Positions 32,301 through 33,443 of a DNA stretch of 64,000 nt are shown here, piece after piece. The DNA lies in contig JAWQFM010000034.1 of assembly GCA_033442325.1 (NCBI GenBank), positions 62,001-126,000 of the forward strand, given 5' to 3'. Under the pieces are notes generated by a model, which was not told the DNA's origin, made no database searches, and worked only from the letters and a program-made list of their open reading frames with translations. The first letter of the stretch is position 1. Every line of letters starts with the position of its first letter. The position numbers and the translations under genes are program-made. This DNA is from Salpingoeca rosetta. Taxonomy: Eukaryota > Protista > Choanoflagellata.

Positions 32301-33443
32301 GCGCCCGTTGGAGTGGATGGGGATGTCGGCGAGGGACAGGCCACGCAGGTACATTTCCTCCGGTTTGCTGAACTGCGGCACGCCCGCAAACAGGATGGTG
32401 TCTGTCTTGGAGATGTAGATCATCTCGCCCTTGATGTACAGGTAGTCTGTTGCCACGCTGATAAACGACTCGCCCTCCACCGACGAGCACGACACAGTGC
32501 GCTGCAGCAACGCGTCGTCGTCGTCGTCCCAGCCGTGCTCGGCCGCACGCGCCCGCAGCTTGGCCATGTGCTTCTGCTCCTTCTTCATGTGGTACTGCTC
32601 GTCGCGCGCAATGGCCACAAACGCGTCGTGATCAAACTGCATAAAGGTGGTGAACGTCTTCTGCGGCACGTTGGGCTGCGTCAGCTTGAACACGTCGTGG
32701 AAGGTGAGGCTGTCGAGCTTCTGGTCCTGGAACCGCGTTTGCAGCGACGACCCCATGCTCACCACGCGCATCTTGCGGTCAATTTGCACGTGCCACGGGA
32801 ACAGCTCATCGAAGAGACCCGTGTCGGCGGACAGCTTTGAGAACTGGCGCGCGCGTGCGACGGCGTCCAGGTCGGCCTCGGTGCCAAACGCCTCTGGCGG
32901 CAGGTACAGCTTGAAGATGTCGTGGTCCTTGCCCTCGTGTTTCTTCTGGTAGTGTTCGTACTCAAACTCCACGTTGTACACGATGCGCGCCACCTGCCGC
33001 AGCAGGTTGATGGCATATGGCCACAGGCCCGGCCGGCTCGAGTAGTAGTGGAGGAGGACGAGGCCGTCATCGTGGCGCTCGGGGCGGAAGCTGGGCGCCT
33101 GCATGTCCGGGTACGCGTTGACGAGGTTGCGGTGCAGCGCGTCCACGTGCTGCAGGCACTCGTAGAACGTGCGGCCGAGAGCCTGCACAAGCGGGGTGTA
33201 GCCTTGCGCGGCGAAGTTGTTGATCTGGATGAACCCCATACCGGCAATGACCTGCTCTGCGGTCTTGCCCGTGACCTTGGCGGCGGCCTGCACCACCGTC
33301 TGCGTGTACTCATCGCTGTACTTCTTGTAGAAGTTGTTCTTGGGGTCTTCGCCCAGCTCGGCGTACAGCTCCTTCAGCAGTCGCTCCCCATCGTCCAGTG
33401 ACTCGATCCACTCCAACGTGGCCGTCGTGATGAACCCATACAT
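29349..33443 (-). CDS. Soluble guanylate cyclase (H-NOX, PAS/HNOBA, coiled coil, class III cyclase) with a long C-terminal extension
   Basis: Exons at 33443-32151, ~31833-31711, 31375-31285, 31001-30793 and 30494-29349. Motifs: MYGFI start, VDALH (proximal His104), YPDMQAPSF, HYYSSRPGL (YxSxR), FDELFPWH, LYIKGEMIY, GLSLADIPIH, LLHSILP, VTILFSD, VYKVETIGDSYMVASG, IRIGMHSGP and RPRYCLFGDTVNVASRMES. Confidence 0.96.

What the first reader, a model, noticed from the sequence alone, without database searches (positions are those of the whole stretch)
33000..33443. sGC H-NOX domain has the distal-pocket Tyr of O2-binding cyclases
HYYSSRPGLWPYAINLL aligns with mammalian beta1 HYYSEREGLQDIVIGII. That puts Tyr143 (codon 33015-33017) at beta1 Ile145, equivalent to Tyr140 of Thermoanaerobacter (Caldanaerobacter) H-NOX. 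Established: this Tyr marks O2-binding H-NOX domains and atypical sGCs such as C. elegans GCY-35 and Drosophila Gyc-88E. Proximal His104, YxSxR and the conserved Pro are intact. The hinge Gly (beta1 G148) appears replaced by Asn. Inference: an O2-regulated rather than NO-selective cyclase, and a candidate aerotaxis sensor in a unicellular relative of animals.
Basis: partly seen in the sequence, partly recalled or inferred. Interest (0 to 1): 0.7.

Follow-up and report, generated by a model that had tools for sequence, protein, structure and literature searches.

The report
Choanoflagellate guanylate cyclase with polar haem pocket
This is an intact soluble guanylate cyclase gene of the choanoflagellate Salpingoeca rosetta whose haem sensor domain carries the tyrosine (plus a partner glutamine) that marks oxygen-binding relatives; that prediction has already been published for choanoflagellate cyclases as a class, and nobody has yet tested it.

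Summary
A five-exon, 953-codon minus-strand gene (33443 to 29349) encodes H-NOX, HNOBA and a cyclase domain. Tyr143 (33015-33017) aligns without gaps to Ile145 of human beta1 and Met144 of Nostoc H-NOX. His104, Pro117 and Y133-S135-R137 are intact, and Asn146 replaces the Gly148 that all 70 animal sequences keep.

New here:
- Gln73 sits at the beta1 Phe74 / Nostoc Trp74 column, which is Asn74 in the O2-binding bacterial H-NOX.
- Gln73 and Tyr143 are invariant in 13 choanoflagellate sGCs and absent from 70 animal sGCs.
- The clade includes Choanoeca flexa sGC2, which has been published as predicted O2-binding.

The genome is S. rosetta. It has about 12 H-NOX genes (3 Tyr/Gln type, about 9 Phe type) and no detectable NO synthase.

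- The same Tyr-based prediction across choanoflagellates, with the S. rosetta genome in the survey, was published in 2022.
- GCY-35's Tyr is reported in a different alignment column.
- Tyr alone is not sufficient for O2 binding.
- The aerotaxis role is untested, and two paralogues share the motif.

The verdict is an ordinary member of a published class that still gives a concrete, testable candidate.

The parts
29349..33443 (-). Whole coding region of the soluble guanylate cyclase gene (5 exons, 953 codons plus stop)
   Evidence: Splice sites read (all GT..AG, frames continuous). The exons map contiguously and in order on the transcript-derived orthologue P0061, at residues 1-433, 434-474, 475-504, 506-574 and 575 onward.
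32151..33443 (-). Exon 1 (431 codons): H-NOX, HNOBA/PAS-like domain and start of the coiled coil
   Evidence: Pfam PF07700 and PF07701; donor AAG|GTTCGT at 32151/32150; 76% identical to P0061.
32952..33440 (-). H-NOX haem domain (residues 2-164)
   Evidence: PF07700 E 8e-42. AlphaFold2 model pLDDT 90.3. Foldseek TM 0.77 to human beta1, 0.76 to Nostoc H-NOX and 0.72 to the Tt H-NOX O2 complex 1u4h.
33015..33017 (-). Tyr143 codon (TAT), at the distal-pocket column of beta1 Ile145 / Nostoc Met144
   Evidence: Lies in the first turn of the predicted helix 141-156.
33225..33227 (-). Gln73 codon (CAG), at the column of beta1 Phe74 / Nostoc Trp74 (Asn74 of Tt H-NOX by shared numbering)
   Evidence: Invariant in the clade and Phe in 70 of 70 animal sGCs. 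Nostoc Trp74 borders the distal pocket (PMC7356049).
33132..33134 (-). His104 codon (CAC), proximal haem ligand
   Evidence: Aligned to beta1 His105; present in all rows.
33093..33095 (-). Pro117 codon, the conserved haem-contact proline (beta1 Pro118)
33033..33047 (-). Y133-Y-S135-S-R137, the Y-x-S-x-R haem propionate motif
33006..33008 (-). Asn146 codon (AAC) at the column of beta1 Gly148
   Evidence: Gly in 70 of 70 animal sequences and N/A/S/T in the 13 clade members. One partial clade member, P0003, keeps Gly.
32160..32828 (-). HNOBA domain (residues 206-428)
   Evidence: PF07701 E 4.8e-55.
31711..31833 (-). Exon 2 (41 codons): start of the cyclase domain, with the first metal-binding Asp (LFSD)
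   Evidence: Aligns to human alpha1 461-499, with LFSD on alpha1 LFSD (Asp486); splice sites.
31285..31375 (-). Exon 3 (30 codons + 1 base): KVETIGD motif
   Evidence: PF00211 piece; splice sites; maps to P0061 475-504.
30793..31001 (-). Exon 4 (2 bases + 69 codons): IRIGMHSG ... RYCLFGDT
   Evidence: PF00211. Best solved match is the Chlamydomonas homodimeric guanylate cyclase 3et6 (E 1.3e-17), followed by beta1 and alpha1.
29349..30494 (-). Exon 5 (381 codons + stop): VNVASRMES...KGKG end of the cyclase domain, a His/Ser-rich low-complexity stretch, and a conserved C-terminal module ending ITLYCVQGQ
   Evidence: The C-terminus is conserved with P0061 (ITIYCVQE).

Best explanation
The gene encodes a haem-based gas-sensing guanylate cyclase of Salpingoeca rosetta. 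It belongs to a choanoflagellate-specific sGC clade whose distal haem pocket is polar.

Shown:
- The architecture is complete: H-NOX, HNOBA, coiled coil and a class III cyclase.
- The haem-ligating residues are intact.
- Tyr143 and Gln73 sit at the two columns that are Ile145/Phe74 in NO-selective beta1. These are Tyr140/Asn74 in the O2-binding bacterial H-NOX.
- One chain carries both the alpha-type metal-binding Asp and the beta-type motifs, so it can form an active homodimer.

Inferred:
- Tyr143, positioned by Gln73, donates a hydrogen bond to haem-bound O2, so the ferrous haem can hold O2 (and still NO or CO).
- Ligand occupancy changes cGMP output.
- In an organism without NO synthase, the physiological ligand is more likely dissolved O2 than endogenous NO.
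- A role in aerotaxis is possible but is only one of several options, and it would be shared with two paralogues.
For: Domain architecture and exon model.

Pocket columns:
- Ungapped alignment of Y143 to beta1 I145 and Nostoc M144, and of Q73 to beta1 F74 and Nostoc W74.
- The same columns appear in MAFFT alignments.
- Q73, Y143 and A144 are invariant in 13 clade members (mean identity 51%) and differ from at least 95% of 70 animal sGCs.
- The other lining positions match residues named in Tt H-NOX mutant entries (I5, I75, F78, L144). Here they are I5, I74, F77 and L147.

Clade and family:
- The clade contains 'soluble guanylate cyclase 2 [Choanoeca flexa]' (P0055, 41% identity), which its authors predicted to bind O2.
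- The clade separates from the animal sGCs in a quick H-NOX tree (SH-aLRT 98).

Structure and catalysis:
- Confident H-NOX fold, with Tyr143 in the first turn of helix 141-156.
- LFSD aligns with alpha1 Asp486.
- The best catalytic-domain match is a homodimeric algal guanylate cyclase.

Context:
- No NO synthase domain was found in the genome, while the controls rang.
- Tyr140 with Asn74 and Trp9 stabilises O2 in the bacterial protein.
Against: - There is no biochemistry for any Tyr-type choanoflagellate sGC; only the NO-selective Cf-sGC1 was tested.
- Tyr does not guarantee O2 binding. O2 affinities of Tyr-bearing sensors span 1000-fold, and a Tyr-bearing Clostridium H-NOX behaves differently from Tt H-NOX.
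- sGC needed changes at both I145 and I149 to interact with O2. The I149 equivalent here is Leu147.
- The third member of the bacterial triad, Trp9, is Thr9/Leu10 here.
- I could not inspect model coordinates, so the side-chain geometry of Tyr143 and Gln73 is inferred from homology only.
- I could not align directly to Tt H-NOX, Gyc-88E or GCY-35, because the searches did not return those sequences.
- No RNA evidence.
Confidence: 0.6

Rival explanations
1. It is mainly a sensor of exogenous NO (from bacteria or other protists), or of CO. The polar pocket tunes NO on/off rates and does not create an O2 site.
For: - All H-NOX domains bind NO, and in Tt H-NOX the Tyr hydrogen-bonds bound NO.
- Reyes-Rivera et al. 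note that choanoflagellates without NOS may detect environmental NO.
- The I149-equivalent second polar residue is missing, being Leu147.
- A Chlamydomonas sGC is CO-activated (title cited).
Against: - The genome already has about 9 Phe-type, fully hydrophobic-pocket H-NOX genes that fit NO selectivity better.
- The Gln73/Tyr143 pair is strictly conserved, as expected for a functional hydrogen-bond pair.
Confidence: 0.2
2. It acts as a redox or oxidation-state sensor. In air the polar pocket promotes haem autoxidation, and activity reports the ferric/ferrous state, not reversible O2 binding.
For: General behaviour of haem sensors with polar pockets (my own knowledge).
Against: The bacterial Tyr/Asn pocket gives a stable O2 complex, not rapid oxidation (PDB 1u4h and 1u55 are O2 complexes).
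Confidence: 0.1
3. It is a non-sensing or regulatory partner that works only as a heterodimer with another of the roughly 12 sGC paralogues, and the Tyr is a lineage marker without a role in ligand choice.
For: Large paralogous family. C. elegans sGCs are thought to act as heterodimers (PMC1435932).
Against: One chain carries the full haem-binding set and the full catalytic set. Gln73 and Tyr143 are invariant across a clade at 36-78% identity.
Confidence: 0.07

Closest known systems
Choanoeca flexa sGC2 (P0055) and the other published 'O2-preferential' choanoflagellate sGCs (Reyes-Rivera et al. 2022)
   Same: - Same clade in the H-NOX tree.
- 41% identity over H-NOX and HNOBA.
- Same HYYSxRPGLWPYA motif and the same Gln at the Phe74 column.
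- Same domain order and the same conserved C-terminal tail.
   Different: - It is a different paralogue group. The window gene's orthologues are P0061 (76%) and P0001 (74%).
- Asn146 here versus Ser in Cf-sGC2.
- Neither protein has been tested.
Drosophila Gyc-88E / Gyc-89D, C. elegans GCY-31/33 and Manduca beta3 (animal atypical, O2-sensitive sGCs)
   Same: Tyr in the beta1-Ile145 column (PMC1435932). The cyclase is able to act as a homodimer. The architecture is the same.
   Different: - They belong to animal lineages, whereas choanoflagellate sGCs diversified separately.
- The literature points to a second polar residue at the I149 column in the animal enzymes. Here that column is Leu147, and the polar partner is Gln73 on helix D.
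- I could not retrieve the sequences, so I made no direct alignment.
Thermoanaerobacter/Caldanaerobacter (Tt/Cs) H-NOX, the structurally defined O2-binding H-NOX
   Same: Same fold (TM 0.72). Tyr at the equivalent column, an amide side chain (Gln versus Asn) at column 74, and the same hydrophobic lining residues (I5, I75, F78, L144 versus I5, I74, F77, L147).
   Different: 17% identity. It is a stand-alone or chemotaxis-receptor domain, not a cyclase. Trp9 of the hydrogen-bond triad is not conserved here. The helix G Gly is kept in Tt H-NOX (from memory) but is Asn here.
Human/Manduca sGC beta1 (NO-selective)
   Same: It is the best sequence and fold match (E 4e-22, TM 0.77). The haem ligation set and domain order are identical.
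   Different: Its pocket is Phe74/Ile145/Val146/Gly148, versus Gln73/Tyr143/Ala144/Asn146 here. Beta1 lacks the first metal-binding Asp and needs an alpha subunit; this protein has it.
Chlamydomonas reinhardtii CYG12 catalytic domain (PDB 3et6)
   Same: It is the best solved match to exon 4 of the cyclase domain (E 1.3e-17), and it is a homodimeric protist sGC.
   Different: Only the catalytic domain was compared, so nothing can be said about its haem pocket.

Membership tests
H-NOX (HNOB, PF07700) haem domain | Profile match over the curated cut-off and the H-NOX fold | tested here: met
   143 bits against a cut-off of 25.5. AF2 pLDDT 90.3 and Foldseek probability 1.00 to beta1, Nostoc and Tt H-NOX.
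H-NOX (HNOB, PF07700) haem domain | Proximal His, conserved Pro and the Y-x-S-x-R propionate motif | tested here: met
   H104, P117 and Y133/S135/R137 align to beta1 H105, P118 and Y135/S137/R139.
Soluble guanylate cyclase | H-NOX, HNOBA, coiled coil and class III cyclase on one chain | tested here: met
   PF07700, PF07701 and PF00211 pieces lie in colinear exons. The exons map contiguously on the full-length orthologue P0061.
Soluble guanylate cyclase | Complete catalytic residue set (two metal Asp, Glu/Cys for guanine, Asn/Arg for the transition state) | tested here: met
   LFSD aligns to alpha1 Asp486. KVETIGD, RYCLFGDT and VNVASRMES are present. Assigning a role to each motif rests on established class III cyclase knowledge, not on an assay.
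O2-binding (atypical) H-NOX / sGC class | Hydrogen-bond-donating Tyr at the column of Tt Tyr140 / beta1 Ile145 | tested here: met
   Ungapped alignment to beta1 and Nostoc H-NOX. Equivalence of the column to Tt Tyr140 is taken from the literature.
O2-binding (atypical) H-NOX / sGC class | Supporting polar residue(s) that position the Tyr (Asn74 and Trp9 in Tt; a residue at the I149 column in engineered or atypical sGC) | tested here: inconclusive
   Gln73 sits at the Asn74 column. Thr9/Leu10 sits at the Trp9 column and Leu147 at the I149 column. The geometry was not inspected.
O2-binding (atypical) H-NOX / sGC class | Stable Fe(II)-O2 complex and O2-dependent cyclase activity | not testable with these tools
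   Needs spectroscopy and enzyme assays.
Choanoflagellate Tyr/Gln sGC clade (includes Cf-sGC2) | Groups with the clade in a tree and carries its diagnostic residues (Q73, P84, L85, H99, N106, V108, P121, Y143, A144) | tested here: met
   All nine are present. In a quick H-NOX-only tree, the clade is supported at SH-aLRT 83, and the clade plus the S. rosetta Phe-type genes against animals at 98.

The most novel reading that the evidence does not exclude
Choanoflagellates evolved their own solution for an O2-binding sGC pocket. It is a Gln73-Tyr143 pair across helices D and G, mimicking the Asn74-Tyr140 pair of anaerobe H-NOX. The animal atypical sGCs instead are reported to place Tyr and a second polar residue one turn apart on helix G. 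The three S. rosetta genes of this type would together be the long-sought fast O2 sensors behind choanoflagellate aerotaxis.
Probability: 0.15. Interest if true: 0.7.

Novelty: already known. Interest (0 to 1): 0.33.

Why it matters
S. rosetta swims up oxygen gradients, yet a 2023 review from the field says the mechanism of oxygen sensing 'remains elusive' and that HIF is absent (PMC10770216). The aerotaxis paper names no cyclase.

Tyr/Gln-type sGCs are fast haem sensors coupled to cGMP, a second messenger that controls flagella and contraction in relatives. That makes this gene and its two paralogues concrete knockout candidates in an organism that, from my own knowledge, can be edited with CRISPR.

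Biochemically, a Gln/Tyr pocket in a eukaryotic sGC would be a natural test of how much of the bacterial O2-binding triad is needed. The class-level prediction is already in print, so the value lies in the specific gene list and the Gln73 observation, not in a new concept.

Tried and rejected
- **The look-up of sequencing runs:** many runs of one organism hold exon 1, but none is on record as RNA. This is suggestive at most.
- **Joined model:** the spliced 953-residue model was not sent to any search. Exons were searched one at a time by reference and that step was left out, so I did not check whether this exact protein is in public annotation.
- **Tt H-NOX alignment:** phmmer against PDB did not reach Tt H-NOX by sequence. 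Foldseek reached it, but gives no residue-level alignment. The equivalence to Tyr140/Asn74 therefore rests on beta1 and Nostoc alignments plus the literature.
- **Animal comparators:** two word-based protein searches returned no Gyc-88E, GCY-31/33 or GCY-35 sequences, so I made no direct alignment with them.
- **Papers:** Derbyshire et al. 2010 (PMC2878511) is not held.
- **Tree:** the careful tree did not finish, so only the quick tree is reported.
- **Rejected readings:**
  - That the ORF upstream of Met1 (through the TG repeat) is coding. MYGF is the conserved sGC N-terminus in all homologues.
  - That Trp12 replaces Trp9 of the bacterial triad. It is one helical turn away and variable (W/Y/F/M) in the clade.

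Full report
**What is there.** The ORF begins at ATG 33443 with MYGFITT, the canonical sGC N-terminus. Pfam finds HNOB (residues 2-164, E 8e-42) and HNOBA (206-428, E 5e-55) in exon 1. It finds pieces of the class III cyclase domain in three downstream reading frames.

Reading the junctions gives five exons: 33443-32151, 31833-31711, 31375-31285, 31001-30793 and 30494-29349. All have GT..AG introns and continuous frames, for 953 codons. Each exon, aligned separately, maps end to end on a transcript-derived orthologue from another choanoflagellate (P0061, 76% identity; residues 1-433, 434-474, 475-504, 506-574, 575 onward). This supports the model. I did not search the joined model anywhere; exons were searched one by one by reference.

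**The observation.** I verified four codons by hand:

| Residue | Codon (minus strand) | Window coordinates |
|---|---|---|
| Tyr143 | TAT | 33015-33017 |
| His104 | CAC | 33132-33134 |
| Asn146 | AAC | 33006-33008 |
| Gln73 | CAG | 33225-33227 |

phmmer against all PDB chains aligns the region without gaps to human beta1 (LHYYSSRPGLWPYAINLL over LHYYSEREGLQDIVIGII). The correspondences are Tyr143 = Ile145, Asn146 = Gly148, His104 = His105 and Y133/S135/R137 = Y135/S137/R139. The same column is Met144 in Nostoc H-NOX. The conserved proline is Pro117.

The literature equates beta1 position 145 with Tyr140 of the O2-binding Thermoanaerobacter H-NOX (PMC1435932). An AlphaFold2 model built on a 33-row alignment is confident (pLDDT 90.3) and puts Tyr143 in the first turn of helix 141-156. 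Foldseek matches it to beta1 (TM 0.77), Nostoc H-NOX (0.76) and the Tt H-NOX oxygen complex (0.72).

- *A second polar pocket residue.* Gln73 aligns with beta1 Phe74 and Nostoc Trp74. Trp74 borders the distal pocket in the solved Nostoc structure. In the bacterial O2 binder, residue 74 is the Asn that, with Trp9, holds Tyr140. The remaining lining residues also resemble the bacterial protein: I5, I74, F77 and L147 here, against I5, I75, F78 and L144 named in the PDB mutant titles. Trp9 is not conserved.
- *Clade-wide conservation.* The pair is not peculiar to this gene. In 13 full-length choanoflagellate sGCs (mean pairwise identity 51%, minimum 36%), only 33 of 170 H-NOX positions are invariant. 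Nine of these differ from at least 95% of 70 animal sGCs, among them Gln73 (Phe in 70/70), Tyr143 (Ile in 65/70) and Ala144 (Val in 70/70).
- *A published relative.* The clade includes 'soluble guanylate cyclase 2 [Choanoeca flexa]' (P0055).
- *The hinge glycine.* It is lost across the full-length clade members (N/A/S/T), not just here. One partial member, P0003, keeps it.

**Genome context.** The assembly is 55.4 Mb. Exons of two paralogues found in it are letter-identical to NCBI Salpingoeca rosetta proteins (P0058 and P0064), so the organism is S. rosetta. Earlier notes of this scan say the same.

A six-frame scan with PF07700 finds about 12 H-NOX loci. They fall into two groups:

| Type | Genes | Motif | Tyr143 column | Gln73 column | Hinge Gly |
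|---|---|---|---|---|---|
| Tyr/Gln | 3 (this one, P0058 on C2, P0064 on C6) | ...RPGLWPYA... | Tyr | Gln | lost |
| Phe | about 9 | ...GLxxFMMGAL... | Phe | Phe/Ser/Val | kept |

In a quick H-NOX tree, the Tyr/Gln clade and two S. rosetta Phe-type genes group together against all animal sequences sampled (SH-aLRT 98). The three S. rosetta Tyr/Gln genes sit on three different sub-branches, each with orthologues in other species. That tree is quick, H-NOX only and has long branches. No NO synthase oxygenase domain is detectable in the genome, although the control genomes rang.

**Catalytic side.** Exon 2 aligns best to alpha1, with LFSD over the alpha1 LFSD that holds metal-binding Asp486; beta1 lacks that Asp. 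Exon 4's best solved match is the homodimeric Chlamydomonas guanylate cyclase 3et6. KVETIGD, RYCLFGDT and VNVASRMES are present. By established class III cyclase knowledge, one chain therefore carries everything needed for an active homodimer.

**Interpretation.** The most likely reading (about 0.6) is a homodimeric haem sensor cyclase whose polar Gln73/Tyr143 pocket lets the ferrous haem hold O2, as well as NO and CO, and so couples dissolved O2 to cGMP. The architecture, residue equivalences, conservation and catalytic completeness are shown. The hydrogen bonding, O2 binding and direction of regulation are inferred.

Several points caution against more:
- Tyr-bearing haem sensors span three orders of magnitude in O2 affinity.
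- A Tyr-bearing Clostridium H-NOX behaves unlike Tt H-NOX.
- Making sGC interact with O2 used changes at both I145 and I149, and the I149 equivalent here is Leu147.

The rivals are an exogenous NO or CO sensor (0.2), a redox sensor (0.1) and a non-sensing partner subunit (0.07).

**Comparison with the literature.** Reyes-Rivera et al. (bioRxiv 10.1101/2022.02.14.480389) searched the M. brevicollis and S. rosetta genomes plus 20 transcriptomes. They applied exactly this distal-Tyr criterion and reported that NO- and O2-preferential sGCs are widespread in choanoflagellates. They predicted Cf-sGC2-4 to bind O2 and tested only the NO-selective Cf-sGC1.

I could not see their figure, so I cannot say how S. 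rosetta was scored.

PMC1435932 places the Tyr of the Gyc-88E/GCY-31/33 clade in the beta1-Ile column and that of the GCY-35 clade three columns earlier.

The link to aerotaxis is not made in the papers I could read. The aerotaxis paper names no cyclase, and a 2023 review calls the oxygen-sensing mechanism elusive. The link is a reasonable but untested hypothesis, and three genes share the motif.

**Limits.** Tt H-NOX, Gyc-88E and GCY-35 sequences were not retrievable, so those equivalences rest on beta1 and Nostoc alignments plus the literature.

**Verdict.** In kind it is already known. The modest added value is the Gln73 partner, the three-gene candidate list and the absence of NOS. Interest 0.33.

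Noticed in passing
G000 loci L002-L009 and L012 (other contigs; L006 is on the same contig C34, about 500 kb away): About nine further S. rosetta H-NOX genes have Phe at the Tyr143 column. Several lack the Arg of Y-x-S-x-R (HYYSSNAG, HYYSRNAG, HYYSDSVG, HYYSQHHG), which suggests altered haem propionate binding. L003 and L009 are a tandem pair about 5.8 kb apart on C16.
   Followed up: partly
window 29349-29700 (minus strand, end of exon 5): A C-terminal module of about 60-90 residues (VRVYADANH...ITLYCVQGQ) is conserved in P0061, P0055, P0058 and P0064 and has no Pfam match. A His/Ser-rich low-complexity stretch precedes it.
   Followed up: partly
window 33126-33149 (residues 99-106): Residues flanking the proximal His are also clade-diagnostic: His99 (Asn in 69/70 animal sGCs), Asn106 and Val108. 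The proximal side of the haem may therefore be tuned as well.
   Followed up: no
window 33021-33023 (Trp141): Trp141, two residues before Tyr143, is Trp in 12 of 13 clade members and Tyr in P0064. It lies near the column where the GCY-35 clade and some lophotrochozoan and vertebrate beta2-like sGCs carry a Tyr (GLYPIV, GLYHIV).
   Followed up: no
window 33449-33482, 33726-33753, 32048-32063, 30683-30702, 29241-29341: Long (TG)n/(CA)n dinucleotide runs abut the start codon, fill the introns and follow the stop codon. They create long spurious ORFs on both strands.
   Followed up: no
window 21364-22118, 24091-24260, 45127-45798, 47418-47517: Runs of N (assembly gaps or withheld stretches) explain the apparent low-GC blocks and the six-frame 'ORFs' there.
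   Followed up: yes
I did not examine it further and sent it to no search tool.
   Followed up: no
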